DNA from: Pecten maximus
Lineage: Eukaryota
Direction of reading: 5' to 3'
NCBI RefSeq assembly: GCF_902652985.1
Contig: NC_047023.1
Coordinates: 20,150,001 to 20,214,000, forward strand
Length of the DNA stretch: 64,000 nucleotides
In this document: piece after piece, positions 17,201 through 59,504 of the stretch
Numbering within the stretch: position 1 is the first letter of the stretch
Layout of the letters: the number at the start of each line of letters is the position of its first letter
Notes under the pieces: model-generated
Database searches by the model: none
What the model was told of the DNA's origin: nothing
The model's input: only the letters and a program-made list of their open reading frames with translations
Translations under genes and position numbers: made by a program

Positions 17201-17954
17201 CCTAGCAATTTGTTTTGTAAGTGCAAAAACATAGATATGTAAACATATTCTATTTGAAATAAAATACGAAGAAAATTAAATCAAAAGTGAAGAGTAACAG
17301 AGGAAAGAATCCTCTAACGTGATTCAACCTCAAATATTTCAGTTCCTCATTCATTTTTTTTTAATTTCAGCCTGCGGCGCCGATTCCTTAGCTGACGTCA
17401 TATTTGTTTACGACGCTCCTGGCCTTGGTGCCCGCAAGGCGCGCCTATTGACATCATTTGTTCATGACGTCACTCGTAGTCTCCAGACCAGCTCCGGTAA
17501 GCTGAGGATTGGTCGCAGGTCTGACAGCTGTCCTTCCAATAGCAACATCGACTTGACAACTGATATCAACCTGCAAGCATTCAGCAACATCATGTTTCCT
17601 GGGATTGAGACGCTACTTGGACAACTTAGAATGGCGTTTCCGAATAGATTAGACGCCAAAAATTTAGCGATAGTATTTGTAGACGAAAGTACGCAAAACA
17701 TCGAGTTGGCAACTAGAGTTCTGAAGGGGGACCTCAATTTCCACGTAATGGTAATTGCTATTGGCGACATGTCTTTAGCCAGAGTTGCAAGTGACCTTGC
17801 CTCTCTTCCATACAACGACTACCTGATGAACATACCATCGTATATGTCTCTTGGGGAATATCGATACGAATTCCTCAAGAAACTCTGCTATCTCATCACA
17901 AACGAACCAATATATTTACGAGATACCAGAGTAAGACAAACTCGTGATCTCTGA
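8236..17954 (+). CDS. Gene A: secreted triple-vWA protein with mucin-like Thr/Pro/Ser linker (collagen VI/matrilin-like vWA), ~1052 aa, 6 exons
   Basis: Exons 8236-8277, 8558-8591, 10783-11355, 12609-13940, 16623-17216, 17371-17954. All GT-AG, phases 0,1,1,1,1, total 3159 nt in frame. Signal peptide MWFHIVIATAILLMNEVES-AP. vWA1 DVVFLLDSSQE..ITDG, vWA2 DVFFALDSSNS..LTDG, vWA3 degenerate DVIFVYDAPGL. An extra exon hidden in the 9854-9982 gap cannot be excluded. Confidence 0.88.
9854..9982. other. Assembly gap (N run) in intron 2 of gene A
   Basis: Run of N. Confidence 1.
10243..10387. mobile_element. Long imperfect palindrome (hairpin-ended non-autonomous element, Crypton-like by inference)
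   Basis: gcattaaaatgccttctttgg...caaagaaggcagttcaatactta; ends resemble those of 45590-45749. Confidence 0.5.
10628..10695. repeat. Short inverted repeat / hairpin
   Basis: caggacaaaagtattcgcacgatt ... aatcttgtgaatacttttgtcctg. Confidence 0.75.
10783..11355 (+). CDS. Gene A exon 3: vWA domain 1 (MIDAS partly degenerate, DSSQE)
   Basis: CGPMDVVFLLDSS...TRVGVI...TNTG...AIVITDGRS...MFVIGV...SCE; phase 1-1. Confidence 0.92.
12609..13940 (+). CDS. Gene A exon 4: mucin-like PTS region with 20-aa (60-bp) tandem repeats and a basic Tyr/Lys/Met-rich tail
   Basis: ~10 copies of TTNIPSTPAPTTRSPISSTT-like units; acceptor catgcag, donor T|gtaagt. Confidence 0.85.
14968..15440. repeat. 60-bp minisatellite, ~8 copies, in intron 4 of gene A
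   Basis: Unit tgattgtactaatggtagtttatcaacagttttatatggttagcactgtacgcttattta. Confidence 0.97.
15790..16400 (-). mobile_element. Decayed CR1/L2-type LINE reverse transcriptase fragment
   Basis: Minus-strand motifs FCDKSKAFD, QGSVLGP, LFVNDI and LFADD, broken by frameshifts/stops. Confidence 0.75.
16623..17216 (+). CDS. Gene A exon 5: vWA domain 2 (intact MIDAS)
   Basis: CGGKNADVFFALDSSNSIW...TNTS...LTDG...LFAIGIG. Confidence 0.92.
17371..17954 (+). CDS. Gene A terminal exon: degenerate vWA domain 3
   Basis: CGADSLADVIFVYD...LRIGR...AIVFVD...MVIAIG...KLC; stop TGA at 17952-17954. Confidence 0.85.
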
Positions 17955-19164
17955 GAGACTTCAATAGAGCTGAGATCTGTTTGTCGACACTTATTCACGA
18001 AGTGCAACTGGTAATGCAAATTTAAGCAAGTTTTAAAAATATAGTTTGTTAATATAAAACATTTACTGTTTTAGCAATGTTAGGGAATGTATATTTATGT
18101 TTTGGAACACTTTTGGTCGGTCGGTGTTTTGGCGGATGATCGTTTCAACCAAGCTTCACGAAGACTTGAGGATGCCATTATTGTTGTTTGCATCAGTTAT
18201 CAGGAAAACGGATGTGAAAACGCACGTACCTGTGGTATGTAAAATAAGCAGACTATTTCATCCCAAAATAATTGGCACTGGAACTGGAGATGATGGTAAA
18301 TATCGAGCGGAATGATTCCGTTTTTTCACTGAACCGTTCCAGAAACTGTTTGGGAAACCCAAGTTTGTCATAGACACTGCTGAAACTGTTTTGTATATGC
18401 GTGGAGTTTAAACGAGAGTGGACGTATGGAAAAGAACGTGTAAAAAGGGAGAGAATCAAGTTAATTTTCATTGTAAGAATACAGCTGCATTTAAATAAAT
18501 GATTGTATACTTTGTTATATTTGTTTTTACAACAAAACATAATAAAATGAAATACATAATTCTTTCTAGCTTTCATATCAATATATTACCTCACATCAAA
18601 TTATCACAAGATAATAAGACAAAGGACGCATTTCTTTTGGACATTGTCATTCTTTGTAATTTCAATTTAAATGTTTGGTTGATTGTGGTATATTCTATCA
18701 GTTATATTTAATTGAAGGTTATCATATTATTAAACATTTACCTACGGACTCTCATACTTTTAAATAGAGTAACTGAAGACCTATCGAACTGACTTTCATA
18801 GTTTTCGTTACCTTAACACACGAAACTTTCGCTATTAGGCTCTCATAGTTTTCATGTAACTTTACACCTGTCTTTTATTGTCTGATGTAAAGTGTTTAGT
18901 AACTTTGCACAAAACTCTCATTATTTTACCTTATTTTACACCTACCTTTATTGTCAGACGTAAAGTTTTCAGTAACTTCAATCCTTTCTCATAATTTTCT
19001 AGGAAATCACAACTATCATTTCTTGTCTGGCGTAAAGTCTTTAGTAACTTTACTCCATCTTTCAATGTTTTCACGTAATTTTACACCTATCATTTATTAT
19101 CGGACGTCAAGTTTACAGTAACTTCACTCCTAGTTTTCATATAATTTTACAATTATTTTTTGTA

Positions 19165-19717
19165 TGCTGGATTTTAAGTTTCAAGTAACTTTACTCCTAT
19201 CTCTAATATATTTCAGTAACTTTACTCCTATCTCTCATTGTTTTCAGTAACTTCACATCTATCTCTCATAGTTTTCAGTAACTTTACTCCTTTCTCTCAT
19301 AATTTTCAGTAACTTTATTTCTACCTCATAATTTTCAGTAACATTACCCTTTTCTCTCATAGATTTCAGTAACTTTATTGCTATCTCTCATAGTTTTTAG
19401 TTTACTCCTATCTCTCATAGTTTTCAGTATCTTTACTCCTTTCTCTCATACTTTTCAGTAACTTTACTGCTATCTCTCATAGTTTTCAGTAACTTTACTG
19501 CTATCTCTAATAGTTTTCAGTAACTTTACTGCTATCTCTAATAGTTTTCAGTAATTTTACTGCTATCTTTCATAGCTTTCAGTAACTTTACTGCTATCTC
19601 TCATATTTTTCAGTATCTTTACTGCTATCTCTAATAGTTTTCAGTAACTTTACTGCTATCTCTCATATATTTCAGTACTTTACTGCTAACTCTCATAGTT
19701 TTCAGTAACTTTACTTT
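19165..19717. repeat. 31-bp minisatellite (degenerate copies extend back to ~18790)
   Basis: Unit cagtaactttactcctatctctcatagtttt. Confidence 0.92.
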
Positions 19718-20995: not shown

Positions 20996-21552
20996 TTACA
21001 GTCTGATATGGAAATACTCCAAGTCCAGTACCGGGCAAAGCAACTCCAGGAATGCGTCTTTGTATGATAACAACTCCCTGTATGATGGCACGCGGATGAA
21101 GGTGTTATGAGCCAAGTATGGGATATTAGTGGACTCGTCTGCTCCGATCACTACTGTGACAAACCGTGTGTCGGGCATGGTCGCCATTTGTCTCACAACC
21201 TGATCGACATCGTGAAGTCTGTTATCCAAGAATACGATGGCCACAGATTTGGCACCTGCTCTGCCACCATTTAACGTGGAGAAACCAGAAGCGCGAAGTT
21301 TCCTTATCAAATCGGTGATGCCCGGAAGAACTTGGTTGGACCAAACATGGATGTCATCGGGAGATGAGAGAGCAGTGTATGCGTCATTCAAGCAATCATA
21401 CAACATGCGTCCTACGCGGACATTTCCAGAGGGGACATCCAAGCTCTGGACGATTTTGGAAACAAATTTGGAGATATAGCTGGTTTTCGACTGTCCAAGG
21501 GAAAGAACGTCATACATGAAAAGAACGTCTGACATATCTCGGCTTCCACAAA
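20996..21552 (-). CDS. Gene B terminal exon: degenerate vWA domain 3
   Basis: CGSRDMSDVLFMYD...VRVGR...NGGR..AKSVAIVFLD...LLCP; stop TAA. Confidence 0.88.
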
Positions 21553-24500
21553 CTGAAAAACATAAATTGCATTGTTTGTATTAAGGCTTTTTCATTATGT
21601 TTCTATTTTTCAAAGAGTCGTTTAGTAAAACAGAGTTTTACTTCCTGATAAAAGATCACATATATAATTTCTTTTCCCTAGTGTTATAAGTTTTGTACCA
21701 ATGAACATCGTAATACAGTTTAATTTAACGCTTAGTGTACTTACGCTTTTCAATATCCAGTTCACACGTCCTCGAAGCCAGAAGGTCCTTAATGGAATCC
21801 AATGCCCGGAAGCTCCTGACCTGGAACACATGCTTATCATGGGGTTCATTCCCTATATTCTGGAGTTCCTGAAGTTTTGCGCCATTTCCTATACCGATAG
21901 CAAATAGATATATTCCTTGATTCCGGGCAAGATCTGATTCTATTTTTGTTTGCATTTGGTCTCGTGAGAGTCCATCTGTGAGGACGATAATAATGTGAGC
22001 CACGCCCTCCCGTCTCCTCTCCTCCGTAAAACCACTTTCTCTGACAAATCGGATTGCCTCAGCAGTATTAGTTGTACCATAAGCATACGGGATTCTCTGA
22101 ATGGCGTCAGACAAACTTCCTACTGTGTTTGCAGATCCGAGAGGGACTTCAAGGTTGTATGAATTACTGAAAGTCACGACCCCAACTCGAGTTTTGTCCT
22201 GGGAGATATCAAATCTGGAAACCATGTTCTTGACGAATGTCTTCTGGCGCTCGAAGTTGTATTTTCCAATACTAGTTGAGGAATCCATCAAAAAGTAAAT
22301 ATCTGCTGGCTTTCCGGTGCAGGCTGAAGAAAATAAAAATTGAAAATGAAGAATCATGTAAAATAAAATAGTAAAATAGAAAATAAACCACAGAGGCAAA
22401 GCTCAAGGGGAAAATGTTACCGCTGCCGTAACAGGAATGAGGATCCTTCAGGACATAAAAGACGACGTTATTCCCTTAAACAAACCGGAGATGAAAGAAA
22501 ACACTAGATCGGCTACGTACCTTTGATGAAGAGAGATGGGTCGATGTCCCCGACAGGTGGCAATGTCCATGAGGTGTTCCTCCTTCGCGTGGTGGTTATA
22601 GCTTGGCGTGTTGGTCTAGGTGTTATTGGCCTTCTGGGAGTAAGCCGAGCTGTAATTGGCCTCCGGGGAGTTGGCCTAGGTGTAATTGGCCTTCTGGAAG
22701 TGGGTCTAGGTGTTGTGGGTCTGGGAGTTGTAGGTTTACGTGTTGTAGGTCTTGATGTTGTAGGTCTAGGTGTTGTAGGTTTGGTTGTGGTAGGTCGAGG
22801 AGTGGTGGTTGAAGTAGTGGTGGTAGTGGTTATCATTCGTCTTGTTGTTGATCCTGGAAAATTCATTACATATACAATTAACTATATCTAGATATAAGTA
22901 AATACATTTACACCAGCAAATCATACGTATATTAAAAAAATCAATACACATACAATTAAATACATCTAGATATAAGTGAAAACATTTACAACAGCAAATC
23001 ATACGAAAATTAAAAGAAAAAAAATGTCTTCGCCATACCTAGTTCATTTGTTGAGTTGGATGTCAGGATATTTAGACAAGAATAGTCACTTACTAAGAAT
23101 ATAATAATAACACTGACACGAGTCTGTCGTGCCAGGAAGCACTTGGGTTTCTCATTAATCAATTACTTGACTTATGATTTATGTTAGGCGATTGTTCCGG
23201 TATGCCTGTATTGTTAATACTTCTTCAGATATTACTGTTATTTTGGCATCTACTCGATCATAAAGGCAATTTAACTTAGATAACTGGCGAAATAGGAGAC
23301 TTTTTATCATGAAGACTTTAGTTTACGATCCACGCCACTAGCTGACTTGTGACCCCATACACAGTTGTCTGTCATGCCAGGGTGGCATAAAGTGTAGACT
23401 GCGGAAGATTGTAGGCGGTAATGAAGACATGTTCAGGACCATTTGAAAGACTGTAGCCATTTAATAGGTGCATAGCAAAACATATGTATCCGGTGCTCAA
23501 CAGGACACCACAGTGCTTTCGTAATGTTTGGCAATATTCGAAACAGATAACCTTAACTTCCTCAATGATAAAATGTGCAGTAGAGAAAAAATGACATGTG
23601 CATGTTTTGTAAGGAGCGTTTGATAAGATGAACATTCTGCTTACAGTGTTATAGAGTTGATTCATTTTAAATAACATCCGTTACAAAATAATCAAATATC
23701 TGATTTAAGCAATTGATATTGCTTAGAAAATGTTAATATTTTTACTCCAATTAAACATATTATGATGCCTTTGAGCTTCCTTCACACGCTATGGTAAACA
23801 CGTCTACACTAACAAACGCATATTGTTAATCTTTCGGATGATTGCGAGTAATTAGTAGAAATATCAGTTATTTGATTGTAGTATCGAATGTGAGAATACC
23901 TATACGTCGTTATTCTTTTGACATAGCTCAAATTGGAATATTGCATTGATTTAAATTATTTTTCTAATCCAAAAAAATCATCGAAAACCTCCATTGTTGT
24001 ACGTCTTCAATAGTGAGGTATACCACTGTTAAACGCAATGAAGTATCTATTTATTTTGTATAAACATTATATAAAGACCCGGGCGTTGTTATGGTTGTAT
24101 TAAAAGTAATTTAAGGTCGATGAGAGACAGGCTCAGAACATTGATGGATGATTGATGTGTTTCAATATCATGCTAGCTAAATTATAAATGAGTTTTCTAT
24201 ACTTAAATATTATTTTATTACTACAGTGCATCCCGACATTCATGATACAGGTGATTTGAACTTTAAATGTGCTATATATTTATTGATATGGGTCGCCGCA
24301 TCTTCTTGAGCGTTATTTTTGATCTAGAGGAAATTGCTTATAACTGACAAGGCGCATGAAATGTGATCACAGACACGAGCACATAATGAAACCCGGATAG
24401 GTTTGACGAGTGTACCTACTTACACATCAATTCGTCTTTTATAAACTCCAAAGTGTCTTGAATTGAACGAACTTCACGAACTTGTATGTAAGAGTTTATG

Positions 24501-26685
24501 TGCCAAACATAACACGAATTTATAAACAATAAACATTCGGCTGAATGACAACTTGATTGATGAAGTACATATTTGCCAAGAACGGCACTCAGTGAACAGC
24601 CATTAGCTCTTCAAATAGTGTTTTAAGAACCATTTTATCTAAAGCGCTACTTAGTAAGTCAGGAAAGGTTGTCGCCTGTTGCCAGTAATAAAGACTTATG
24701 CAGCTTAATTGGTCACATGACATGATAACAAATTATCACATGATTTCTTTTATATCGCTGCTTAGATAAATCATTCAACTCATCGTTGAACTAATATACA
24801 ATGCTACATGTTGTCAGTGTTAATATAAACAATGCTAATTGTCGCTATACTCAACAATGTTGATAAAAAACCCAATATCATCATATCAAAAACTAATTAC
24901 GATATATATAACATAATCTGTTTTAAACTTCAGAATGTTAATGATGTTGCAATAATTACCTCTACATGCACGTTGCTTGAAGACATCCTTCTCAGACAGC
25001 AGGGCGTCATAGTTTTCCACAGAGAAGAAGTACCTATCGTCAGGATCGCTAGCTATACCTCTCAGTTCACTCTCCTTAACGTTCGGTCCAACGCCAATGG
25101 CGTAGATCTCAATATCCTTGTTATGAGCTGCCATGGCAGCCTCTAGCGTCTTCCGCGACTCCTGCGACTTTCCATCTGTGATGACAATGGCGATGTGAGG
25201 CAGGTCTTCTCTTCCTCCATTACCCCGCTGGAACATGCGCGTTGTCATAAACTTGATAGCACTTCCAGTATTTGTCCGGTCACCTTGTCTGTGACGGATC
25301 TTCTTGATAGCAGCTCTGACGTCAGCGACATTTTTGTACCTATTGAGCTTGAATTTGACATAGTAGCTCCTGGCGAATGTCAAAACCCCGACACGGGTTT
25401 CGTCAGGGCCAATATTGAATCCACTGACAACACTGTCGACAAATTCCAGTTGCTTCTGGAAGTCTGGATTCCAGATACTACTTGAAGTGTCCAGCACAAA
25501 CACAATATCAGCGGCTTCGTTACACAGGGACTCAGTGGCTACATCAACAAATGCAACAATTAATAAATTAATACAAATGATTTCGAGGTTAAGGATCATG
25601 AACTGTAATAGATTGATACAAAATATATTTTTGATGGATCTGTATACGAAAAAGTTATTTTTCATTACATATAATGTAACGTGCCTTAGTTAGTTTTCAA
25701 TAGTATATGGAATAGTAACGATGTTTCAGATTTGTTTTAGACAAATGAAAAAAGGAAATGTTTGAAAAAGATAGCAAATGAGTTTTACACGTGAGACACA
25801 AACCAAAGATAAAAACGGGGAAGGATGAGAACGTTAATACAATCATTTATAATTTGTTACCAGGATGGATTTAAGGGAAACACCATATGTTTATCGCAAA
25901 CTTCTGATGACATCACATAATATACCATATTTACCATACAGGCGATATATGTTGAATACATAACATTATCCTGGTATATAACAAGTGATATGGACATATC
26001 AAATTAATACGGTTAATATTATAGGCTATATTATAATAGAGCTGTAATGATCTCGCTAACATTATTGCATTTTCGTTTTCTACTTCAATTCCTCGTGTAG
26101 AATAGAAGTAATCGATAAAACAACGTGTTTTTGAAGACTATTGTTAACATGGGCATGTGGATAGGATACTTACATCTGCGTTGCGCATGCACTTGCAGGA
26201 GTGCCTGTTAAAGAAAAAATAAATAAAACTTATTAGTTAAATATTTATTGCTTGCATTTATATTAAAAAATGGGAATTTTCGACAAATCATGTGCTTGTA
26301 TTGTTACCGTGTACATTGGCTAAATAAAGGAGAGTATAGCATGTACATACGGTTAACACATGGGAATAAATGAGATTGAGATCGAACGTAGTCAGCCCAC
26401 ATTATAGCACAAGTGATAAAAAGCTTAAGGAAATTAATTCTTATAATTTTTATCAATTCATAAGAATTTTAGGTAACATGCATGTAATTAGTAGATTTTT
26501 CTGTTTCGACTATTACAACTACGACATTCAACGATTCAACGGATTATTTCTATTTATTATATAATAATAGCCCCAAAATAAGTCAAAATTATCATAAATA
26601 CCAATAAAGTGGTAAAGAAAAGAAAACATATAATAGGAAAATACAATAGACTTACCAACGCAGCAATCAACAAAAGTATCTTCAT
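20996..26685 (-). CDS. Gene B: secreted triple-vWA protein with Thr/Pro/Arg-rich linker, ~702 aa, 6 exons
   Basis: Exons 26685-26656, 26204-26174, 25538-24960, 22853-22521, 22323-21745, 21552-20996. All GT-AG, phases 0,1,1,1,1, 2109 nt in frame. Signal peptide MKILLLIAALALLQVHA-QR. vWA1 DTSSS, vWA2 DSSTS, vWA3 degenerate DVLSL. Confidence 0.92.
21745..22323 (-). CDS. Gene B exon 5: vWA domain 2 (intact MIDAS)
   Basis: CTGKPADIYFLMDSSTS...TNTA...LTDG...LFAIGIG...RTC. Confidence 0.93.
22521..22853 (-). CDS. Gene B exon 4: cationic PT(T/P)xR pentapeptide linker
   Basis: TTTPRPTTTKPTTPRPTTSR...PITPRPTPRR; ttttccag acceptor, G|gtacgt donor. Confidence 0.85.
24960..25538 (-). CDS. Gene B exon 3: vWA domain 1 (intact MIDAS)
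   Basis: CNEAADIVFVLDTSSSIW...TNTG...ITDGKS...IYAIGVG...RAC. Confidence 0.93.
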
Positions 26686-39341: not shown

Positions 39342-41523
39342 ATGTTTATTCCATTTTTTATTTTATCATTGGTAAGTAAAAAGATTTTAGATAAATACTT
39401 TTTTGGGATATAACGGCATTATTTATGATATCATCTAATGATATTGAAAAACATGAAGCAATGATAGGAATGTAAACTAATGTCCTATATTGATTTTAAA
39501 TAATTTCTCGATATACAAGTCCTTAATAATGTGCTCAATATAAATTCTTAAATATCTGGGTAAATATTATATATATTTTTACCTAGAATAAGTGTATTTT
39601 TATCACCTGATTGTTTTGAATAACATATATTATTCATAGTTTCGTTATATTTTCAGATATCTGTTGCTGTTGCTGCTCCACTGGCTACAGAAGAACCAGT
39701 CGACGTTTTAAAATGTAAGTTTGATCTATAATTATATTGAGTGTAGCTTAAATTATATAGAAATTTGTCTTATTGTCATTTACACGAAAATATTCTTACT
39801 TTAAAGATAGATACCGTTATATGATGTTTACAAATTAACTTATCTATTTCATTTGTATTTCAGTTTGCCATGGGAAGCCTGCCGATATTTTCTTTCTACT
39901 AGATAGCTCCTCAAGCATATGGATCGTACACTACCGGAAACAACTCAAGTTCATACAGGACCTTGTCGCAACCTTCCCTATCTCCCAGACCGACACAAGA
40001 ATTGGTGTTGGTATATTCTCCCACCTTTACCAGACGCAAATATCATTCGGAGATTTTGATAACGTGGATGACCTTCAAAACAGGATAAAAAGAATACCTC
40101 ATATGTTGGGAAGCACTTACACAGGACGAGCATTAGGAAAGGTCCGGAATGAGTTTGTCAGGAAGGCCAGGCCAGGTGTGGCACACGTTGCTGTGATCCT
40201 CACCGACGGGGTGTCAAGAAACGTGATCTCGACCTTTAACCAAGCTCGACTCCTAAAGGACCAAGGGGTTTACGTGTTCGCAATAGGGATTGGCAAAGGA
40301 CCAAATATGAAAGAGCTTCAAGCCATTGGAAGCGAACCTAGTGATGAGTTCGTCTTCAAAGTTGCAAGTTTCAACATACTGGAATCTATCAAGGACAAAC
40401 TTGCCATGAAAGTCTGTAGAGGTGAGGAAATCTTCTTTAAAATAATTCTATGACATTTATATCAAATGGTAACTATGATCGTATTCATGTGATTAAAAAC
40501 TAAAATATTCAATATTGTGAAGTCTTCCGTCAAACATCGAATTTAAAACATCACCGGGATTTCAATTTTCGTTTACATTTTTTGGGGGAATAACTGAGTG
40601 TGTGTTTTTAATACAAACAATATTTTTGATATTTTTTGTTGTAGTTCCCAAATATCAAGCCTATTGTAGCGCAGAAGTAGAGACTGATGTGATGTTCGCC
40701 TATGATTTTGCATCCATGGGAACAAAGAATGTGCGACATGCACATAACTTCATTAGTGACGTTGTGGGGAAATTTGGAAACATGGCCGAAGGGATGGTAA
40801 GAGCAGGGATGCTTTCTGGATTTTGTGAAAACAGTCGAATTGACCTCAACCAGTACAATAATAAAAGGAGATGTCCAGCGCTGTCCGTAACACCGAGGTT
40901 AGAGGTCTGGACAACATCGTTGAAGAACTCCATCGCAACAGTTACAACATATCCAGGGGAGGACGGGGAAACGCAAGAAAAATGGCCGTTCTTTTTGTGG
41001 ATGACTCTGTAGAAAAATTCGATCAACTTATTGTTCAGTCGGAAATAGCGAAGACCGCAGGGATCAAAGTGTATGTTGTGGGCGTTGGGAACGTTGATGA
41101 GGAAATCCTGAGTACCATCTGCTCAAGTCCTCCAGAAAACCACCTGATGCGAGTATCCTCATATAATGACCTAGATTCTATTGCAGAGCAATACTCCGAA
41201 ATGTTCTGTGAAGGTGAGCACTTTATATAATGTCGATTGTCTTACGCTTGCTCACAAGCAGCCTGTAGTTTGATATAGGACTGCTTGTTTAAATTTTCTT
41301 CTTAGGAAGAAAAGGAATAATATGTCAGTTCTGTGCACGCTTCAAAATTAAATATATATAATATATTATATAAATAATGTATATGATCAGAAAAATGCAC
41401 TTTAACTTCCTACAAATGTTGATCAGAGACTTTTATTATACAAACTTGTTGTATGTTGATATCAAAAAGTAAGGTTTTTATTTTTGTATTTCAGAAATGT
41501 CCGTTTTACCCGACTATGAATAA
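39342..41523 (+). CDS. Gene C: secreted double-vWA protein (~414 aa if the 1-nt frameshift at ~40863-40870 is repaired), 5 exons
   Basis: Exons 39342-39371, 39657-39714, 39864-40421, 40645-41213 (569 nt, one short), 41495-41523. Signal peptide MFIPFFILSLISVAVA-AP. vWA1 DIFFLLDSSSSIW..LTDG, vWA2 degenerate DVMFAYDFASMG. Confidence 0.85.
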
Positions 41524-42559
41524 CCTGATCACACAAGAAAAGGGAATAAATGAACTTATCACGCAAAGTTCCACCACTTGAACATCAACAATGGGCGGAA
41601 TAGCATATCAGTACTGGACTTTATTGACTATCGGCATAGGGTTAAAAAGGATATTAGAACTAGACGGTACTGGCTATCGGCATAGATATAAATAAGGATA
41701 GAAGAACTGCACGCTAGTGGTCATCGGCATCAGACAGAATAGGATATATCAGTACTGGGACTGTAAAGGCTATCGGCAAAGGATTGAAAAGGATATAAGT
41801 ACTGGACAGTACTGGCTATCGGTATAGGACTGAGTATGATATATCTGAATGAGATATAGGAACTTGACGGTACTGGTCATTGGCAGTGGCGGGAATAGGA
41901 TAGCAGAACATCATTTAATGTGCAAACTGAACATCGGAACTTGGCGAAATAGGACATTGTCACTTGACAATACCTGAACATCTTTAATGGACAGTAATGT
42001 ATTGGAGTTTTAAACTTTGTGGTCATTGTTGTATGATTGAAGATATTTGGTTTATAACTCGGTACCAGTGTTTTATCAAGACAACGAAACGACGAATACT
42101 TATTTATCTCGATGTGAAAGGAAATTAACTTGAATTCAATAGCTATGAATACAGAGTCTCAATAGCGAAGAGAAACTTGATTAATTAGTATCATTGCTAC
42201 ATCATATCAGTCGTTGTAAGTCATTATAATTAATGCCTATACACAAAGGAAGACAGGAAGTCGCGTTGAAATGTTATTCATTAAGGCAGGTATTATGAAG
42301 TACAACGCCTTGCTAATTCATCATTATTGAAGCATGAAATGTTAAAACATTCTATTTATTACCACATTGTATCAACAATGCAACACATATTTTACTATTT
42401 AAGTATGTACAAATTTATACGGACTTGTTAAACTATACATTTGTTATATTATTGTTTTTTATATATTAAATAAAATATTGACCAAACTGTGTGTTATTTT
42501 GATATAAGGCGATGACGGATTCCCTTAGAGTGAGCGCAAGAATAAATGAAGCGTGTCCA

Positions 42560-42745
42560 GACTACTGTACTATATTGTGCTGCACTACACTGTATTGCAC
42601 TGTCTCCACACTGCAATGTACTGCACTGAACTGCATTGTACTATATTGTATTGCAATTCGCTGTACTGTACTGCACTACACTGTACTGTGCTTTACTGTA
42701 GGGTATTGTACTGTAATGTAATACTGCATTGCACTGCATGGTACT
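42560..42745. repeat. Degenerate (ACTGT/ACTGC)n pentanucleotide microsatellite; paralogous copy at 51135-51290
   Basis: actgtactgcactac periodicity. Confidence 0.85.
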
Positions 42746-43059
42746 ATAAGTATATCGAAATAAGGAAAATCAATTTAGCATGCAAATTAACGTTCAGCAT
42801 ATCATACTTTGACATGAACAAGTGTGTAGATTTATACTGACGCAGGGCCTTTAGAGACATCAGCAGAAATGCATTTCTTTTGTCTTTGTCACAGTAGGAT
42901 CTGCTAATATAGCATATACCCGCTGGAACAAACTGTACCCTCTCTTAGTTGACTTTGTTTTGTTTCCATATGGACGGATTACAGACACTTTTTCACAGAC
43001 TTTATTTCAAAACTTTGCAAACCAAATTATATCAACTGATTGTAATCGCTGTTCTTTAC

Positions 43060-48098: not shown

Positions 48099-50260
48099 AT
48101 GTTTATTCCATTTTTTATTTTATCATTGGTAAGTAAAAAGATTTTAGAAAAACATGATTTTTTTGGATATAACGGCATTATTTATGATATCATCTAATGA
48201 TATTGAAAAACATGAAGAACTGATAGGAATGTAAACTAATGTCAATTTTAAATCATTTCTCGATATATAAGTGCTAAACAATGTGCTCAATATCAATTCG
48301 TAAATATCTGGGTAAATATTAAATATATTTTGACATAGAATAAGTGTATTTTTAACACCTGATTGTTTTGAATAACATATATTATTCATAGTTTCTTTAT
48401 ATTTTTTCAGATATCTGTTGCTGTTGCTGCTCCAATGGCTACAGAAGAACCAGTCGACGTTTTAAAATGTAAGTTTGATCTATAATTATATTGGATGCAT
48501 CTTAATTATTTCAGAAATTAGTTTTATTGTCATTTACACGAAAATAGTCTTACTTTAAATAAACAACTAACAAAAACACCGTTATACGATGTTTACAAAT
48601 TAACTTATCTATTTCATTTGGATTTCAGTTTGCCATGGGAAGCCTGCCGATATTTTCTTTCTACTAGATAGCTCCTCAAGCATATGGATCGTACACTACC
48701 GGAAACAACTCAAGTTCATACAGGACCTCGTCGCCACATTCCCTATCTCCCAGACCGACACAAGAATTGGTGTTGGTATATTCTCCCACCTTTACCAGAC
48801 GCAAATATCATTCGGAGATTTTGATAACGTGGATGACCTTCAAAACAGGATAAAAAGAATACCTCATATGTTGGGAAGCACTTACACAGGACGAGCATTA
48901 GGAAAGGTCCGGAATGAGTTTGTCAGGAAGGCCAGGCCAGGTGTGGCACACGTTGCTGTGATCCTCACCGACGGGGTGTCAAGAAACGTGATCTCGACCT
49001 TTAACCAAGCTCGACTCCTAAAGGACCAAGGGGTTTACGTGTTCGCAATAGGGATTGGCAAAGGACCAAATATGAAAGAGCTTCAAGCCATTGGAAGCAA
49101 ACCTAGTGATGAGTTCGTCTTCAAAGTTGCAAGTTTCAACATACTGGAATCTATCAAGGACAAACTTGCCATGAAAGTCTGTAGAGGTGAGGAAATCTTC
49201 TTTAAAATAATTCTATGACATTTATATCAAATGGTAACTATGATCGTATCCATGTGATTAAAAAATAAAATATTCAATATTGTGAAGTCTTCCGTCAAAA
49301 ATCGAATTTAAAACATCACCGGGATTTCAATTTTTGTTTACTTTTTTTTGGGGAATAACAGAGTGTGTGTTTTTAATACAAACAATATTTTTTGATATTT
49401 TTTGTTGTAGTTCCCAAATATCAAGCCTATTGTAGCGCAGAAGTAGAGACTGATGTGATGTTCGCCTATGATTTTGCATCCATGGGAACAAAGAATGTGC
49501 GACACGCACATAACTTCATTAGTGACGTTGTGGGGAAATTTGGAAACATGGCTGAAGGAATGGTAAGAGCAGGGATGCTTTCTGGATTTTGTGAAAACAG
49601 TCGAATTGACCTCAACCAGTACAATAATAAAGCGGAAATGTCCAGCGCTGTCCGTAACACCGAGGTTAGAGGTCTGGACAACATCGTTGAAGAACTCCAT
49701 CGCAACAGTTACAACATATCCAGGGGAGGACGGGAAACGCAAGAAAAATGGCCGTTCTTTTTGTGGATGACTCTGTAGAAAAATTCGATCAACTTATTGT
49801 TCAGTCGGAAATAGCGAAGACCGCAGGAATCAAAGTGTATGTTGTGGGCGTTGGGAACGTTGATGAGGAAATCCTGAGTACCATCTGCTCAAGTCCTCCA
49901 GAAAACCACCTGATGCGAGTATCTTCATACAATGACCTGGATTCTATTGCAGAGCAATACTCCGAAATGTTCTGTGAAGGTGAGAACTTTATATAATGTC
50001 GAACGTCTTACGCTTGCTCACAAGCAGAATATATTTTGACATAAAAATGCTTGTTTAAATTTTCTTTTTATGAAGAATAATATGTCCGTTCTGTGCACGC
50101 TTCAAAATTAAATATATATCAGATGTTATATAAATAATTTATATAATCAGCAAAATGCACTTAAACTTCCCAAAAAAGTTTATCAGAGGTTTTTATTAAC
50201 ATCAAAAAATAAAGTTATGTTTATTTTTCAGAAATGTCCGTTTTACCCGACTATGAATAA
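48099..50260 (+). CDS. Gene D: near-identical duplicate of gene C, secreted double-vWA protein, with a 1-nt frameshift at ~49732-49734
   Basis: Exons 48099-48128, 48411-48468, 48629-49186, 49411-49979 (569 nt), 50232-50260; cggg here vs cgggg in gene C. Confidence 0.85.
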
Positions 50261-51896
50261 CCTGATCACACAAGAAAAGGGAATAAATGAACTTATCCAG
50301 CAAAGTTCCACCACTTGGACATCAAAAATGGGCGGAATGGGATATAAGTACTTAACTTTACTGACTATCGGCATAAGACTGAAAAGGATATCAGAACTAG
50401 ACTGTAATGACAATCGGTATAGGACTGAATAAGAATTGGACGTAGCTGGTCATCGGCATTTGCGGGAATAGGATAGCAGAGCTGGGCATCCTCTATAATG
50501 TGCCAATTGAACATCGGAACTTTGCAAAATAGTACATTGTCACTTGAAAATACCAAACATCTTTGATGGACAGTAATGTATTGGAGTTTTAAACTTTGTG
50601 GTCATTGTTGTATGATTGAAGATATTTGGTTTATGACTTGGTACCGATGTTTTATCAAGACAACGAAACGATGGATAATTATTTATCTAGATGTAAAAGG
50701 AAACTCGCGTTAATTGAATAGATATGAATACAGGTTCTCTACAGCGAGAGAAACTTGATTAATTATTATCATTGCTTTATCATATCAGTCATTATAAGTC
50801 ATTATGATTAATATCTATAAAAAAGGCAAGAGGTCGCGTTGAAATATTATTCATTAATGCAAGTATTTTGAATTACAACGCCTTGATTATTTATCATTAT
50901 TGAGGCATGCAATGCTGAAACATTCTTTTAAATACCACATTGTACCAACAAAGCAACACATATTTTACTATTTAAGTATGTACATTTTCATACGGACTTG
51001 TTAAACTTTACATTTGTTAAGTTTTTGTTTTTGATATATTAAATAAAATATTGACCAAACTGTGTGTTATTCTGATGTAATAAGATGGCGGGTTCTCTAA
51101 GAGTGAGCACAAGAATGAATGAAGCGTGTCCAGACTACTGTATTGTATTGTACTGTATTATGCTATACAACTGTACTACGCTACACTGTATTGCACTGCG
51201 CTGTACTGTACTGTACTGCACTGCATTGCACTGCAATGAACTGCAAAACATCATACTGCACTGTACTGTGATTTACTGTACTGTAATATAATAATACACT
51301 GACTGTCAGCGGTAGCATATGCGAATATAGCATATAACCGCTGGACAAACGGTACCCTCTCTGTGTTTACTTGGTTGTGTTTCCTTATGGACGGATTACA
51401 GAACTTTGTAACAGATCTTATTTCAAAACCGCTGCAAAACAAACTAAATCAACTTATGGTAATCACCGTTGTTGGCTAGGATTGAGGACCGCGATTGTGA
51501 TATGGTAGGAGGATCGTAGAGTACTCAGAGAAATATTTGCCGGGCAGGTGACCGCTTGTACCTTTTCCCATTCGATCGGGAAATCTAACCTCGGTCGCCT
51601 AGGGAATGCTGAGTGTGTCACCACTGAGACAGCCAATCACCCTCAACTGAACTGAAGGCACTGGATTCATGGAAGACATTTTTGTAACAAAAACCTCGTG
51701 AAGTTGTTAACTCTCCTCATAAGACATATTTATGCCGTGTTGTCCTTAATAACAATTCATTTATTGATAACCTAAATCGAGAATATAACACTAAGTGTGA
51801 TGATATTATCAGTTTCAATTTCTGGATATTAACATATCTCATTCCCCAAAATCAGAATATCACAGCGGATTTTATACATATTATTATTATAACGAT

Positions 51897-52979
51897 ATTA
51901 GTATTGGTGGACACTCTGTTTTCTATAAATACTGGTTTAGGAAGGGTGTTCAAGTAGTTAATGATGTGTTAAAAGATTCGAATACTCTTTCTTTTCATAC
52001 ATTCAACGAATTTACTCAGAAATACAATATACAAACAAACTTTCTTAAATATCAGGGTGTTATTAATTCTATCCGTAAAAACTTCCATTTACAGGAGATC
52101 ATGGATAAAGACCTGATATTACCATATATTCCACATAATATATATTTATTTCTCAAATCACAACAGGACAATAAAATTATATATAAAAGTCTTTCAAAAA
52201 ATACAGGAAAAAAAAGTGGAATGAAGTGTTTGATTTTACAGATTCAACATGGGCAAATATCTTTTCCATACCTTTTAAAGTAACAAATAACTCAAAACTT
52301 CAGTGGTTTCAATTGAGAATCTTGCACAATATTTTAACTCTAAATTCAGTTCTTTTTAAAGCAAACATTGTTACAAGTCCGTTGTGTACTTTTTGTAAAT
52401 TGCACCCTGAAACAATAATTCATATTTTTTGGGAATGTGAAAAAGTTCAGTTCTTTTTGCAAAGTTTTGAATCACTTCTCGATGCACTAGTTATCCCGTT
52501 CACTTACAATAAAGAATCATTTATTTTTGGATTTTTGCCACTTGGAAAGTATAACAGTATTGATAATGAAATTACCATGGTTATTAAGCATTACATATAT
52601 AAAACCAGATGTTCCAGTAGCTCTTTAAATGTACATGCATTAATAAATGTAATTAAGGACCACCACAATCTGAAAAAATATATAGCAACATCAAAGGGAG
52701 TTTGTTTTCTTGAAAAGTTTAATCTGGATTGGAATAAATAGAAAAACATATTATCTATTTAAGACCTCTAAAAGCTTAAAAAGTGTTTATTTTCTGTTTT
52801 ATCAATATGTATGTTTATTCTATTGATTTATGTGTTTTTTGTTTTGTTTTTCCCCCCTCCATTTTGACCCTGACAGTCTGTCCCAGGACTCTTCATTTTT
52901 AAAATTAGTATTATGAAATTTCGAGTTATAGTAATTTTAATAATCTGTCAATTGTTGTTATTAGTCTTATTATAAGTCC

Positions 52980-57075: not shown

Positions 57076-59504
57076 CTAAGGCTCGAGAATCAGATTTGCA
57101 ACCGGCATTACGTCCTCAAAGTTCCTTGTTTTCTCATCAATGACAAGTGAAGCCGGGAAGCTGGGAACTTTCAACGCTGGTGAAGAAAAAGAAACAAAGG
57201 TTAAAATAATAATAACAATAAAACGGATGCGTAAAGTACACATATGATAATAGATCATAAGCAGTAGATATAAGTATCGCTTTGATTCTTAATTTTCTAA
57301 AATAATATTTTTCCTAAGATGGATTACACCAGGGTATTATGAATTATTTCTGGAATTCTTTACGTAAATCATTGAGTCATAAAATATTTCTAAAATTTAT
57401 TATTTCTATCTCAAATTATATTTTTGGTAAACGCAGTGTTTCGGCGAAATGAAATTTTGAATTATTAGTGACATATTTCTAACGAATTTAACGGATTATA
57501 TATTCACAAAATTGAAGCCTTAGAAAAACGAAATATTATTTCTGAATTATTTTGTGTTTTTGTCTATAAATTCTCATACAATGGAATAATTGCTCTCGTC
57601 AGACTTACTTTCACACAAACTGCTGACAAATGTATCCTTCATCAAGTTGAGGTCCTTGTGTGTGTCGACATTAAAGAAATGAGCGTCGACTGGACGGAGA
57701 ACGGATCTTTTCAACATTTCAAACTTAGGGTTCTCGCCAATGGTAACCACAACAAACTGGATGTCTTTCTTTGATTTAGCCCTCCGCATTTCAAAAGCTA
57801 ACTTATCAAGCTTTTCGACATTATTGTCAACCACTACAACTGCAAGCCTTCGTGCAGTTTCCCTCCCACCATTAGCTTTTTCAAAACTTTGATTTTGCAT
57901 CTGCCAAATCATTCGGTCAAGTCCTCTAAATTGTCTGTGTTTAACAACAGGGATCAGCTCGTCTAGTTGAGGATAACCGTCCAAATAAATATCCTTATTA
58001 TCGCAGTATCTAGTTATCAGTCCCGCTTTGAGAACTCCGGTATCCATGTTCCCAAAGTTTTCTATAGTATCAGCAATCAAATTCTTGACGTGGTTGGAGT
58101 TCCGTGCACCCATACTAGTAGCATCGAAGGTGAACATCAAGTCTGTTTCCATGCCGGCGCTGCAGTCAGGTTGTGAATTTAATTCCTCCCCTGTGACATA
58201 TAATAACACATCCTTAGATATTGACGTCATTCAACCTGATTTATTTTCAATGTGCTGTAATTTCTTTATGTAAAAATACTTTTATTTTTTTAAACAGGAC
58301 TTTGTTACACATGTATTGTCTTGTTGTGATTTTCGTGCTTAATCAAAATGAAAAAAATCATGAATACTAAGTTGATATCTTACCTTTACAAACTTTATAG
58401 GTCAATGTCTTCCTGATTTCATTTAACAGTTTGAAGTTTGACACGGTGAAGACGTACGTTTCTGATGGTTGACTTCCAATGGCAACTAACTCATCCATTT
58501 TGACCTTATCTCCAATTCCAATGGCAAATACTGTTATCCCTTCATATTTCAAAGCCGCAGCTTCGTATTCTGTCTGGAGTTTATTTGTGGACTCTCCGTC
58601 CGTCATTACCACTAATATCTTACTGACATTTGGACGGGCTCTACGGAATTCATTATTCCTTACAACTCGCAATGCTTTCCCTGTTTGAGTACTGCCTTTC
58701 CGTTGTTGTATGTTTTCAATCGCAAGTTTAAGTTCATTTACATTATCAAACTCGCCCAATTCTATTTGCTGATAATACTGATCAGCAAATATCCCGACAC
58801 CAAAGTGAGTTTGAGAGGCTGACACCGGGAAGAATTCCACAAAATGCTGTAGAAATGTGAGCTGTTGTTGAAAGTGCTTGGACCAGATACTCGTAGAACT
58901 GTCGAGCAGGAAGAAAATGTCAGCAGGATTGCCTCTACACACTACAACAAGAATGACATCCGTTAATGTTAAAATGTACATGAAATTATCATTCTTTTCA
59001 AATATACGTAACACAAAGCGGTCCGTCGAACAGTCATAATCACTGGAAATAAAATATATAACGAGTTTTAAAACAAATCTGTATTATCTGTTGGGAAGCA
59101 TTGTTACTTACATTTATTTAGGACATTACTTTATTGTCTGCTAAGAAGCATTGATACGTACATGTATATTCGTCTTGGTGGGATGTAGAAGGAGCTGGTA
59201 TTGCCTGAATAGACATGACCTGGCGAAATGAAAATAAAAAAATATCATAACAATGTCTCTTAATTATTGTTCTTATTCTTTCGACAGTTGAGTAAATATA
59301 TTTCGCAGTGTGGATTATTTCAAAATAACGTTTTGCAAAGGTTAACAATATTTAAGCTTCCCATAATGGCTATAAAATGCTTATGAATTACGTTTTTAGT
59401 TAATCAATTGTTCTGTTAGTAAAATGCTCAATTCAACTTTGATCGAACAATAACTAATTCAATCATTTACTCACCATTGCCATAATAATGGAACTAGCTA
59501 GCAT
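57076..59504 (-). CDS. Gene E: secreted double-vWA protein, ~442 aa, 5 exons, intact paralog of C/D
   Basis: Exons 59504-59475, 59219-59162, 58941-58384, 58190-57609, 57176-57076, 1329 nt in frame. Exon sizes 30/58/558 are identical to C/D. Signal peptide MLASSIIMAMVMSIQA-IP. vWA1 DSSTSIW..MTDG, vWA2 degenerate DLMFTFDATSMG. Confidence 0.92.

What the first reader, a model, noticed from the sequence alone, without database searches (positions are those of the whole stretch)
17371..58190. Conserved extra cysteine in the MIDAS-dead C-terminal vWA of every paralog: candidate intermolecular disulfide polymerisation module
Seen: each non-terminal vWA exon has just two bracketing Cys. The terminal vWA of every gene has a third Cys at the same position after strand beta-B: A LRIGRRSDSCPS, B VRVGRMLYDCLN, C/D VRAGMLSGFCEN, E LKAGLITRYCDN. 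The mature proteins A, B and E therefore have odd Cys counts (7, 7, 5). C/D add a fourth Cys in this domain (TICSS). The same domain has lost DxSxS (DAPGL, DVLSL, DFASM, DATSM) but keeps a shared D...S(L/M)G-like loop. Inference: the dead vWA was repurposed as a covalent dimerisation/oligomerisation or redox module, while the preceding vWA keeps the metal-dependent binding.
Basis: partly seen in the sequence, partly recalled or inferred. Interest (0 to 1): 0.75.

Follow-up and report, generated by a model that had tools for sequence, protein, structure and literature searches.

The report
Conserved unpaired cysteine in mollusc vWA proteins
A tandem cluster of scallop matrix-protein genes ends in an unusual metal-site-less vWA domain that carries one extra, very conserved and apparently partnerless cysteine, which probably links two protein chains covalently, though nobody has tested this.

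Summary
All five genes end in a vWA domain that lacks DxSxS and carries a third Cys at one aligned position, the beta-B/beta-C turn. Gene E's two vWA exons match exactly the public protein XP_033750924.1, "collagen alpha-6(VI) chain-like" of Pecten maximus, which has 5 Cys. Orthologues of A and B have 7 Cys each.

This is a distinct vWA subtype, named hits being molluscs plus one nemertean. Among 618 vWA domains of the 150 best-scoring proteins, the Cys occurs in 48 of 57 C-terminal DxSxS-less domains, 4 of 123 internal DxSxS-less ones and 2 of 438 DxSxS-bearing ones. It is as conserved as the C-terminal bracket Cys (47 of 51). It sits in a polar, variable loop. 25 of 32 complete proteins have an odd Cys count.

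An intramolecular partner is therefore unlikely, and an intermolecular disulfide is the best reading. That reading is untested, and one free Cys gives dimers, not polymers.

Caveats:
- C and D each carry a different 1-bp frameshift in this exon as assembled.
- The domain is not the last exon in E.
- No model coordinates were available.

The parts
17373..17954 (+). Gene A: last exon, a DxSxS-less C-terminal vWA (DAPGL). Bracket Cys codons at 17373-17375 and 17886-17888. The stop codon lies in this exon.
   Evidence: The Pfam VWA match is only 18.2 bits, below the 23.8 cut-off. It matches the subtype profile at 253 bits. The orthologue P0009 is 89% identical.
17529..17531 (+). Gene A: extra Cys codon (TGT) in RRSDSCPS, in the beta-B/beta-C turn.
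20996..21550 (-). Gene B: last exon, a DxSxS-less C-terminal vWA (DVLSL). Bracket Cys codons at 21548-21550 and 21035-21037. The extra Cys codon (TGC) is at 21392-21394.
   Evidence: (VWA 28.0 bits). The orthologue P0007 is 82% identical.
40665..41230 (+). Gene C: DxSxS-less vWA exon (DFASM). Extra Cys at 40824-40826 and fourth Cys (TICSS) at 41120-41122. A 1-bp deletion relative to D near 40866-40868 shifts the frame.
   Evidence: The public model P0010 carries the shifted frame.
49431..49996 (+). Gene D: DxSxS-less vWA exon (DFASM). Extra Cys at 49590-49592 and fourth Cys at 49886-49888. A 1-bp deletion relative to C in a G-run at about 49732 shifts the frame.
57610..58185 (-). Gene E: DxSxS-less vWA exon (DATSM). 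Bracket Cys codons at 58162-58164 and 57613-57615. The extra Cys codon (TGC) is at 58003-58005, which is Cys278 of P0011.
   Evidence: (VWA 37.7 bits). Models. VIA-align Z 18.5 to an integrin I domain.
57076..57180 (-). Gene E: small 3' exon that follows the vWA exon in the public model. It encodes ...LKVPSFPASLVIDEKTRNFEDVMPVANLILEP and has no Cys.
   Evidence: ORF; C-terminus of P0011.
16625..17200 (+). Gene A: second vWA, canonical (DSSNS, TNT, TDG), with two bracket Cys.
   Evidence: 131 bits.
21770..22321 (-). Gene B: second vWA, canonical (DSSTS), with two bracket Cys.
   Evidence: 161.6 bits.
39869..40420 (+). Gene C: first vWA, canonical (DSSSS), with two bracket Cys.
   Evidence: 99.3% identical to D's copy.
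48634..49185 (+). Gene D: first vWA, canonical (DSSSS), with two bracket Cys.
58385..58936 (-). Gene E: first vWA, canonical (DSSTS), with two bracket Cys.
   Evidence: 133 bits.
10788..11357 (+). Gene A: first vWA, with two bracket Cys. Its motif is DSSQE rather than DxSxS.
12608..13900 (+). Gene A: Pro/Thr/Ser-rich mucin-like linker exon between vWA1 and vWA2.
   Evidence: The orthologue P0009 has the same arrangement.
24940..25530 (-). Gene B: first vWA, canonical (DTSSS), with two bracket Cys.
22513..22866 (-). Gene B: Pro/Thr-rich linker exon.
   Evidence: The orthologue P0007 has the same arrangement.

Best explanation
These are secreted matrix proteins made only of two or three vWA domains, some with a mucin-like linker. 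Their C-terminal vWA belongs to a distinct subtype found in molluscs and one nemertean.

In this subtype the metal site (MIDAS) is dismantled: a shortened D-[SA]-x-[AS]-[LM]-G loop, no Thr, and VD[DEN] in place of TDG. One cysteine in the beta-B/beta-C turn is held nearly invariant. That turn lies on the face that carries the MIDAS in ordinary vWA domains.

The two other Cys of the domain bracket it and pair with each other, as in other vWA domains. The extra Cys therefore has no partner inside the chain.

Most likely it forms one intermolecular disulfide. This would give tail-to-tail covalent dimers, either homodimers or heterodimers among co-expressed cluster paralogues. The N-terminal, MIDAS-competent vWA domains would point outward, making a bivalent matrix cross-linker. 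The forms with two extra Cys (C/D type) could in principle be linked into chains.

Shown: conservation, subtype specificity, odd Cys parity, a polar loop context and the vWA fold. Inferred: bracket pairing, exposure on the former MIDAS face, and the disulfide itself.
For: - Subtype specificity: the Cys, within one column either way, occurs in 48 of 57 C-terminal DxSxS-less domains, 4 of 123 internal DxSxS-less domains and 2 of 438 DxSxS-bearing domains. These are the 618 near-full vWA domains of the 150 best proteins.
- Conservation: Cys in 47 of 51 subtype domains, equal to the C-terminal bracket Cys. In canonical domains the commonest residue in that column is Asp at 24%.
- Taxa: four pectinid genera, Pinctada, Mytilus, Crassostrea, Mya, Solemya, two unionids, Haliotis, Patella, Plakobranchus, Octopus, Argonauta and the nemertean Tubulanus.
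- Own genome: 8 of 9 subtype loci keep the Cys.
- Parity: 25 of 32 complete proteins have an odd mature Cys count, including 21 of the 23 with only this extra Cys. P0142, which lacks the Cys, has an even count.
- Loop context: the flanking columns 51, 52 and 54-56 are variable and hydrophilic, with mean Kyte-Doolittle values of -1.2 to -2.5.
- Model: mean pLDDT 90.7. Beta-B spans residues 46-52 and Cys55 lies in coil. The block 51-60 is the least confident internal block, at 74.
- Fold: Z 18.5, rmsd 2.7 A, 160 of 197 residues aligned to an integrin I domain.
- The 13 two-vWA homologues all keep Cys278.
- Both TGT and TGC encode it among the window's paralogues.
- Precedent read in passages of PMC5774751: adding an unpaired Cys to a VWA domain of VWA2 increased disulfide-linked aggregates.
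Against: - No experiment or read data bear on a disulfide.
- Four of 51 subtype domains, and locus L011, lack the Cys. The family can therefore do without it.
- 7 of 32 complete proteins have even counts. The signal-peptide rule used for that count is crude.
- The 150 proteins were picked with a profile that itself contains the Cys column, although one column adds little to the score.
- The conserved Asp14 and Asp109 next to the Cys fit a metal site equally well.
- Bracket pairing is assumed from other vWA domains and was not tested.
Confidence: 0.4

Rival explanations
1. Remodelled metal site. The MIDAS is not dead but rebuilt. The new Cys, together with the two retained acidic residues (the first Asp of the old DxSxS and the Asp of the old TDG), binds a softer metal such as Zn or Cu, or acts as a free reactive thiol at the old ligand face. 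No intermolecular bond forms.
For: Asp at column 14 is kept in 44 of 51 subtype domains and Asp at column 109 in 45 of 51, although the Ser, Ser and Thr ligands are lost. A further Asp at column 57, four residues after the Cys, is kept in 30 of 51. Beta-B is the strand next to beta-A, so its C-terminal turn lies near the old MIDAS loop. That last point is fold topology recalled from memory, not measured here.
Against: The two Asp are also conserved in canonical domains at 100% and 92%, so they may be retained for folding. The distances are unknown. Column 53 is otherwise Tyr, His, Trp or Pro in the four domains that lack the Cys, and apart from His these are not typical metal ligands.
Confidence: 0.2
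2. Buried or inert free thiol. The Cys is a lineage marker kept for local packing of a rebuilt beta-B/beta-C hairpin and has no covalent or ligand role.
For: The hairpin of this subtype differs from the canonical one. DSSP assigns no beta-C strand in the confident model, and about 37 of 197 residues do not superpose on known vWA domains. Free buried Cys occur in many extracellular domains (recalled).
Against: The flanking positions are hydrophilic and variable, which is unlike a packed core. Conservation equal to that of a disulfide Cys, across bivalves, gastropods, cephalopods and a nemertean at 20-35% overall identity, is more than packing usually demands, since Ser, Ala or Val would do. None of these occurs at column 53 in the 51 domains.
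Confidence: 0.15
3. Thiol-quinone cross-link. The free Cys is a handle for covalent coupling to DOPA-quinone or another non-disulfide cross-link when molluscan matrices (periostracum, byssus, shell framework) are tanned.
For: VWA-only proteins are reported as abundant nacre matrix components (PMC5597905, passages read). vWFA proteins are listed in the scallop byssal secretome along with tyrosinases and peroxidases (PMC9168380, passages read). Cysteinyl-DOPA chemistry in byssus is recalled from memory, not from a call.
Against: It is not shown that these particular genes are expressed in mantle or foot. The subtype also occurs in Octopus and a nemertean, which argues for a more general matrix role.
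Confidence: 0.1
4. Intramolecular disulfide. The extra Cys pairs within the chain, for instance with the TICSS Cys in C/D-type proteins or with a bracket Cys.
For: 13 of 51 subtype domains have a second extra Cys at column 148. 3 complete proteins with both extra Cys have even counts.
Against: The two extra Cys occur independently. Of the 47 domains with the column-53 Cys, only those listed with C148 (12 of them) also carry column 148. P0053 and L011 have column 148 without column 53. 25 of 32 proteins have odd counts. Column 148 maps to the end of helix alpha-6, just after H147-155 (residue 156 in the model). Column 53 lies in the turn after beta-B. In the canonical fold these sit at opposite ends and edges of the domain (topology recalled, not measured).
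Confidence: 0.05

Closest known systems
Matrilins (cartilage matrix protein), the name automatic annotation gives many family members
   Same: Both are secreted adaptor proteins built around vWA domains that act as oligomers. In matrilins the chains are joined covalently by Cys near the C-terminus (recalled). Several family members are labelled 'cartilage matrix protein-like' or 'matrilin-1-like'.
   Different: No EGF domain and no matrilin coiled-coil was found in 7 of 7 family proteins scanned. Only vWA-type Pfam families were hit. Here the candidate linking Cys lies inside a MIDAS-less vWA domain rather than beside a coiled coil.
PTMP1, proximal thread matrix protein 1 of the mussel byssus (PDB 4CN8/4CN9/4CNB)
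   Same: It is a molluscan secreted protein made of two tandem vWA domains. It is the best two-domain structural match to the gene E model (Foldseek E 4e-24) and the second-best sequence match in the PDB. The terminal-domain model superposes on it at Z 18.1, rmsd 2.4 A, 159 residues.
   Different: In the printed alignment both PTMP1 domains carry Ser-rich MIDAS loops (DDSSS, DASSS) and show no Cys at the beta-B/beta-C turn. TM-scores of 0.38-0.43 mean the predicted domain arrangement does not match, and the model's pTM is only 0.47.
Collagen VI / XII vWA domains, the other automatic names
   Same: Collagen VI alpha-3 is the best sequence match in the PDB (9HAN). The vWA fold is the same (6SNK, 4IGI, 9GTU at Z 16.8-17.7).
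   Different: No collagen triple-helix repeat was found in 7 of 7 proteins scanned. These are short two- or three-domain proteins.
VWA2 (AMACO) Arg446Cys variant
   Same: An extra, unpaired Cys inside a VWA domain of a secreted protein gives an odd Cys count and more disulfide-linked aggregates (PMC5774751, passages read). This shows that such a Cys can drive intermolecular bonding.
   Different: That case is a pathological single mutation in a human protein, at another position. Here the Cys is an ancient, conserved feature.
WARP (VWA1) and the ligand-face loops of integrin I domains (recalled, not tested here)
   Same: WARP is a vWA-containing matrix protein that forms disulfide-bonded dimers. 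In integrins the beta-B/beta-C turn (the specificity loop of beta I-like domains, and a contact residue of the alpha-L I domain) lies on the MIDAS face and touches ligand.
   Different: WARP's linking Cys lies outside the vWA domain. Integrin loops act non-covalently around a working MIDAS. All of this is from memory and was not checked by any search.

Membership tests
vWA domain (Pfam PF00092) | Sequence match to the family model above its gathering score (23.8 bits) | tested here: met
   B 28.0 bits, E 37.7, the second piece of C 52.7 and the second piece of D 38.6. The first piece of D scores 21.7 and the first piece of C gives no match. Gene A's terminal domain alone falls short at 18.2 bits, but it matches the subtype profile at 253 bits and aligns over its full length.
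vWA domain (Pfam PF00092) | Alpha/beta Rossmann-like vWA fold | tested here: met
   The AlphaFold2 model of E's terminal domain has mean pLDDT 90.7 and pTM 0.84. VIA-align gives Z 18.5, rmsd 2.7 A and 160 of 197 residues aligned to integrin alpha-M I domain 1NA5. 622 of 998 chains score Z 8 or more. Only E was modelled.
MIDAS-competent vWA / I domain | DxSxS, a Thr from the alpha3-alpha4 loop and an Asp in TDG | tested here: not met
   The terminal domains read DAPGL, DVLSL, DFASM and DATSM, with a one-residue deletion. The Thr position is PGI or RGL, and TDG is VDE, LDN, VDD or VDN. Across 51 subtype domains the column before the retained Asp is Thr in 3 of 51, against 91% in canonical domains.
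Matrilin | EGF domain(s) and a C-terminal coiled-coil oligomerisation domain | tested here: not met
   A Pfam scan of P0011, P0016, P0007, P0151, P0047, P0031 and P0115 hit only vWA-type families, plus weak Copine, TerF and Sec23 matches that overlap the vWA domains. None of the 7 had EGF or a matrilin coiled-coil.
Collagen VI / XII | Collagen triple-helix (Gly-X-Y) repeats | tested here: not met
   None of the 7 proteins scanned had a collagen-repeat hit. No Gly-X-Y run is visible in the sequences printed.
PTMP1-like byssal protein | Two vWA domains, both with a metal-binding MIDAS, in the compact PTMP1 arrangement | tested here: not met
   The second domain lacks the MIDAS. The Foldseek whole-chain TM-score is 0.38-0.43 with rmsd of about 20 A. 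The model's domain arrangement is itself unreliable (pTM 0.47), so the arrangement part is inconclusive.
Proposed subtype: C-terminal MIDAS-less vWA with a beta-B/beta-C Cys | C-terminal position, D-[SA]-x-[AS]-[LM]-G loop, Cys at profile column 53 and both bracket Cys | tested here: met
   All five window genes meet it. 48 of 57 C-terminal DxSxS-less domains in the 150 best proteins carry the Cys. Gly at column 19 is kept in 47 of 51 and Cys at column 53 in 47 of 51.
Disulfide-linked oligomer | A covalent intermolecular bond through this Cys | not testable with these tools
   This needs non-reducing gels or disulfide mapping. The parity argument only shows that a partner within the chain is lacking.

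The most novel reading that the evidence does not exclude
The C-terminal MIDAS-less vWA would be a covalent assembly module shared by molluscs and at least one nemertean, and it would have evolved independently of matrilin coiled coils and of VWF/mucin D-domain multimerisation. The former metal-dependent ligand face would have been converted into a disulfide docking face.

Paralogues with one free Cys (types A, B and E) would act as dimerisers or chain caps. Paralogues with two free Cys that cannot reach each other (type C/D, with column 53 plus column 148; 13 of 51 domains) would act as chain extenders. A tandem cluster such as this one, with at least 8 subtype loci in about 110 kb of contig C9, would then encode a combinatorial disulfide-linked polymer system for the molluscan extracellular and shell matrix.
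Probability: 0.15. Interest if true: 0.65.

Novelty: new variant of a known kind. Interest (0 to 1): 0.4.

Why it matters
VWA-only proteins are counted among the core matrix components of mollusc shells and are reported in byssus (PMC5597905, PMC5854119 and PMC9168380, passages read). How they assemble without collagen helices or coiled coils is open. [quoted passage not shown]

A near-invariant, partnerless Cys in a dedicated C-terminal domain gives a concrete and cheaply testable assembly mechanism. It also provides a sequence signature that sorts this subfamily out of the many proteins labelled "collagen-like" or "matrilin-like".

My searches found no paper that describes the signature.

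It is still a modest finding. Unpaired cysteines that join matrix proteins are a familiar device.

Tried and rejected
1. The search for homologous proteins with E's terminal exon alone (218 aa) gave 0 hits among 543 candidates. This reflects the tool's length window, because the relatives are 400-1000 aa. The unrestricted profile search found them.

2. The search of earlier findings by place and by words returned nothing.

3. The first structure model was the whole gene E protein with a 13-row alignment. It was only moderate: pLDDT 74.9, pTM 0.47, and the Cys loop below 50. I do not use its domain arrangement. The second model, the terminal domain with 46 rows, was confident. That alignment was chosen from Cys-bearing rows. 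I left out P0053, P0061, P0136, P0142 and L011, so the invariance of the Cys follows from that selection and is not evidence.

4. Neither model's coordinates reach the script machine. Burial, the distance to the retained Asp residues and the Cys53-Cys148 distance could not be computed.

5. The Foldseek rows for the terminal domain showed rmsd of 10-11 A. The VIA-align second look showed an ordinary vWA core at 2.4-2.7 A over about 155-160 residues, so I rejected the idea of a grossly different fold.

6. I considered C and D to be an assembly duplicate and rejected it. Flanks are only 81-94% identical while exons are 98-99% identical. Whether their frameshifts, and those of the next gene L004, are real or are assembly indels stayed unchecked.

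7. The tree places the four Cys-less rows in at least three separate spots among Cys-bearing rows. Its deep branches are weak and its root is arbitrary, so I draw nothing else from it.

8. Literature. Accession searches found nothing. No paper found describes the subtype. Supplementary tables that might list these genes in shell or byssus proteomes could not be opened.

Full report
**What is in the window.** The stretch holds five multi-exon genes in which each vWA domain is one exon.
- Gene A (+): vWA 10740-11363, a Pro/Thr-rich linker 12608-13960, vWA 16646-17242 and a terminal vWA 17319-17954.
- Gene B (-): vWA 24886-25665, a Pro/Thr linker near 22513-22866, vWA 21725-22399 and a terminal vWA 20996-21535.
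- Genes C (+) and D (+): one canonical vWA each (39839-40453; 48604-49218) and one divergent vWA each (40602-41230; 49392-49996).
- Gene E (-): vWA 58367-59014 and a divergent vWA 57574-58230.

Pfam recognises the canonical exons at 131-162 bits. The divergent ones score only 18-53 bits.

For whole proteins I used public sequences returned by the searches. P0011 is XP_033750924.1, "collagen alpha-6(VI) chain-like [Pecten maximus]". It contains the window's E exons exactly, as 184-aa and 192-aa pieces.

**The observation.** The codons are 17529-17531, 21392-21394, 40824-40826, 49590-49592 and 58003-58005. Both TGT and TGC are used.
- Each divergent domain also has the N- and C-terminal bracket Cys. 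C and D add TICSS.
- The canonical exons have only the bracket pair.
- P0011 has 5 Cys (31, 214, 225, 278, 408), none of them in the signal peptide.
- The orthologues of A (P0009/P0151, Argopecten, 1024 aa) and B (P0007, Ylistrum, 687 aa) have 7 each. The intact orthologue of C/D (P0016, Ylistrum, 414 aa) has 6.
- The MIDAS is gone. The DxSxS loop is one residue shorter and reads D-A-P-G-L, D-V-L-S-L, D-F-A-S-M or D-A-T-S-M. The Thr is lost and TDG has become VD[EDN].

1. C and D are about 98% identical in this exon, but each lacks one base that the other has. The sites are near 40866-40868 in C and in a G-run near 49732 in D. As assembled, both reading frames break. A public model, P0010, simply reads through as a fused, frame-shifted C+D protein.
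2. In E the "terminal" vWA exon is spliced to a further small exon. The C/D orthologue also continues past the last Cys.
3. A's first vWA has DSSQE rather than DxSxS.

**A distinct subtype, not a local oddity.** I built a profile from the window's five divergent domains and searched it against 1.84 billion representative proteins. I re-scored the 150 best proteins domain by domain. The high-scoring domains, at 78 bits or more, lie almost all at the C-terminal end of proteins with two or three vWA domains.

Of 618 near-full-length vWA domains in those proteins, a Cys at this column, within one position either way, is found as follows:

| Domain class | With the Cys | Total |
|---|---|---|
| C-terminal, DxSxS-less | 48 | 57 |
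| Internal, DxSxS-less | 4 | 123 |
| DxSxS-bearing | 2 | 438 |

In the 51 subtype domains scoring 45 bits or more, the column is Cys in 47. That equals the C-terminal bracket Cys (47 of 51) and exceeds the N-terminal one (38 of 51, partly because some sequences are truncated). In canonical domains the same column is most often Asp, at 24%.

The 30 proteins I looked up include named records from these taxa:
- Pectinids: Pecten, Ylistrum, Argopecten, Mizuhopecten.
- Other bivalves: Pinctada, Mytilus, Crassostrea, Mya, Solemya, Potamilus, Sinanodonta.
- Gastropods: Haliotis, Patella, Plakobranchus, Lymnaea.
- Cephalopods: Octopus, Argonauta.
- One nemertean: Tubulanus.

In the window's own genome the profile finds nine subtype loci. 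Eight lie within about 110 kb of contig C9 and one lies on C8. Eight of the nine keep the Cys. L011 has Tyr there but carries the TICSS-type Cys.

The four Cys-less representatives sit in at least three separate places among Cys-bearing rows on a tree whose deep branches are weak. That looks like scattered loss.

One caveat applies to these counts. The proteins were selected with a profile that contains the Cys column, and related sequences are not independent observations.

**Is the Cys partnerless?** I took complete proteins as those with a start Met, a crude signal-peptide call, two or more detected domains and fewer than 1100 aa. Among these, 25 of 32 have an odd number of Cys after the first 22 residues are removed. 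That includes 21 of the 23 that carry only this extra Cys. P0142, which lacks the Cys, has an even count.

A second extra Cys at profile column 148 (the TICSS position) occurs in 13 of 51 domains. It occurs with and without the column-53 Cys, so the two are not an obligate pair. In the confident model, column 148 maps to residue 156, at the end of helix 147-155, while the turn Cys is residue 55. In the canonical vWA topology, recalled and not measured here, these lie at opposite ends of the domain. The bracket Cys lie at the bottom, far from the turn.

**Where the Cys sits.** With a 46-row alignment the terminal domain of E is modelled at mean pLDDT 90.7 and pTM 0.84. Beta-B spans residues 46-52 and the Cys at 55 lies in a coil that runs to residue 67. 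The block 51-60 is the least confident internal block, at 74. In the earlier whole-protein model the three residues around the Cys were below pLDDT 50.

By alignment with the well-modelled first domain, the Cys matches the last residue of the three-residue beta-B/beta-C turn. The flanking columns are variable and hydrophilic, and the Cys is the one fixed residue among them. A fairly conserved Asp (30 of 51) and an I-x-L strand pattern follow.

The fold is an ordinary vWA. VIA-align gives Z 18.5, rmsd 2.7 A and 160 of 197 residues against an integrin I domain, and Z 18.1 against PTMP1. The large rmsd values in the Foldseek table reflect unaligned loops and tails.

I could not obtain coordinates, so exposure is inferred rather than measured.

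**What it most likely does.** A conserved, partnerless Cys in a polar surface loop of a secreted protein is most simply read as the site of one intermolecular disulfide. Cells usually retain secreted proteins with exposed free thiols until they are assembled (established knowledge, recalled).

The result would be tail-to-tail dimers that present the N-terminal, MIDAS-competent vWA domains outward. This would be a functional analogue of matrilin oligomers. The proteins themselves contain no EGF domain, no coiled coil and no collagen repeat (0 of 7 scanned), so they are neither matrilins nor collagens despite their automatic names.

One thiol per chain gives dimers, not polymers. Only the two-Cys forms could chain.

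A read precedent exists. Introducing an unpaired Cys into a VWA domain of human VWA2 increased disulfide-linked aggregates (PMC5774751, passages).

I put this reading at 0.4. The rivals are:
- a rebuilt Cys/Asp/Asp metal or reactive-thiol site on the old MIDAS face (0.2);
- an inert packing Cys (0.15);
- a thiol-quinone cross-link in tanned matrices (0.1);
- an intramolecular bond (0.05).

**Context and limits.** VWA-only proteins are reported as abundant nacre matrix proteins whose knock-down disturbs nacre (PMC5597905, passages). The VWA domain is reported as part of a shared bivalve shell toolkit that includes Pecten maximus (PMC5854119, passages). vWFA proteins are reported among scallop byssal secretome proteins (PMC9168380, passages).

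Whether the genes of this window are among them is unknown, because the supplementary lists were closed. The presence of the subtype in Octopus and a nemertean suggests a general matrix role.

I found no paper describing the subtype or its Cys. That search covers only the held library.

I left that place out of everything afterwards and did not pursue genes C or D in read or contig collections. The C and D frameshifts, like those of L004, remain unchecked, as does tissue expression.

I rate it a new variant of a known kind: a vWA matrix protein with a dedicated, MIDAS-less C-terminal domain that bears an unpaired Cys. Interest is moderate at 0.4.

Noticed in passing
window 40860-40870 and 49725-49740: Genes C and D are tandem paralogues. 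Exons are 98-99% identical, the intron 96% and the flanks 81-94%. Each carries a different 1-bp deletion in its last vWA exon, so both frames break as assembled. A public protein model (P0010, 717 aa) reads through them as one fused, frame-shifted protein. This may be pseudogenisation or residual assembly indels in a duplicated region.
   Followed up: partly
L004 (G000:C9:20213598-20217107, minus strand, just beyond the window's 3' end): This is a sixth gene of the same kind. Its terminal domain keeps the Cys (VVSGQCDG). It has a frameshift after DATSMG in the terminal exon and another inside its canonical vWA exon.
   Followed up: partly
L007, L011 (contig C9) and L008 (contig C8): These are further subtype loci in the same genome. 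L007 has FRGICNE with ESAAM in place of DxSxS. L008 has MSAECQDD with DSMNA. L011 has Tyr instead of the Cys, keeps an ICSSP Cys and has an in-frame TGA near its end. The cluster on C9 spans about 110 kb.
   Followed up: partly
window 10788-11357: Gene A's first vWA has DSSQE, and its Argopecten orthologue has DSSQK, in place of DxSxS. The N-terminal domain of A-type proteins may therefore also have an impaired MIDAS.
   Followed up: no
window 4192-5511: A long tandem array of a 27-bp unit is open in both strands. The 9-residue repeats are YTTFHFSQR on one strand and GEVKCSVPL on the other. GC and GC skew are raised here.
   Followed up: no
window 14967-15443: A tandem repeat of a 60-bp unit is open as a 20-residue repeat (MIVLMVVYQQFYMVSTVRLF). 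It lies in the intron between gene A's linker exon and second vWA exon.
   Followed up: no
window 51966-52741: An ORF has a Cys/His pattern (PLCTFCKLHPETIIHIFWECEKV). From memory it resembles the C-terminal zinc-binding end of LINE-type reverse transcriptases, so it is probably a retroelement fragment between genes D and E. I did not scan it.
   Followed up: no
window 1468-1653 and 9854-9982: Two runs of N, either assembly gaps or masked sequence. I left them alone.
   Followed up: no
window 42512-42840 and 51085-51350: Low-complexity Cys/Thr/Leu/Tyr-rich repeats (CTVLYCT-like) occur downstream of both C and D. They are part of the duplicated block.
   Followed up: no
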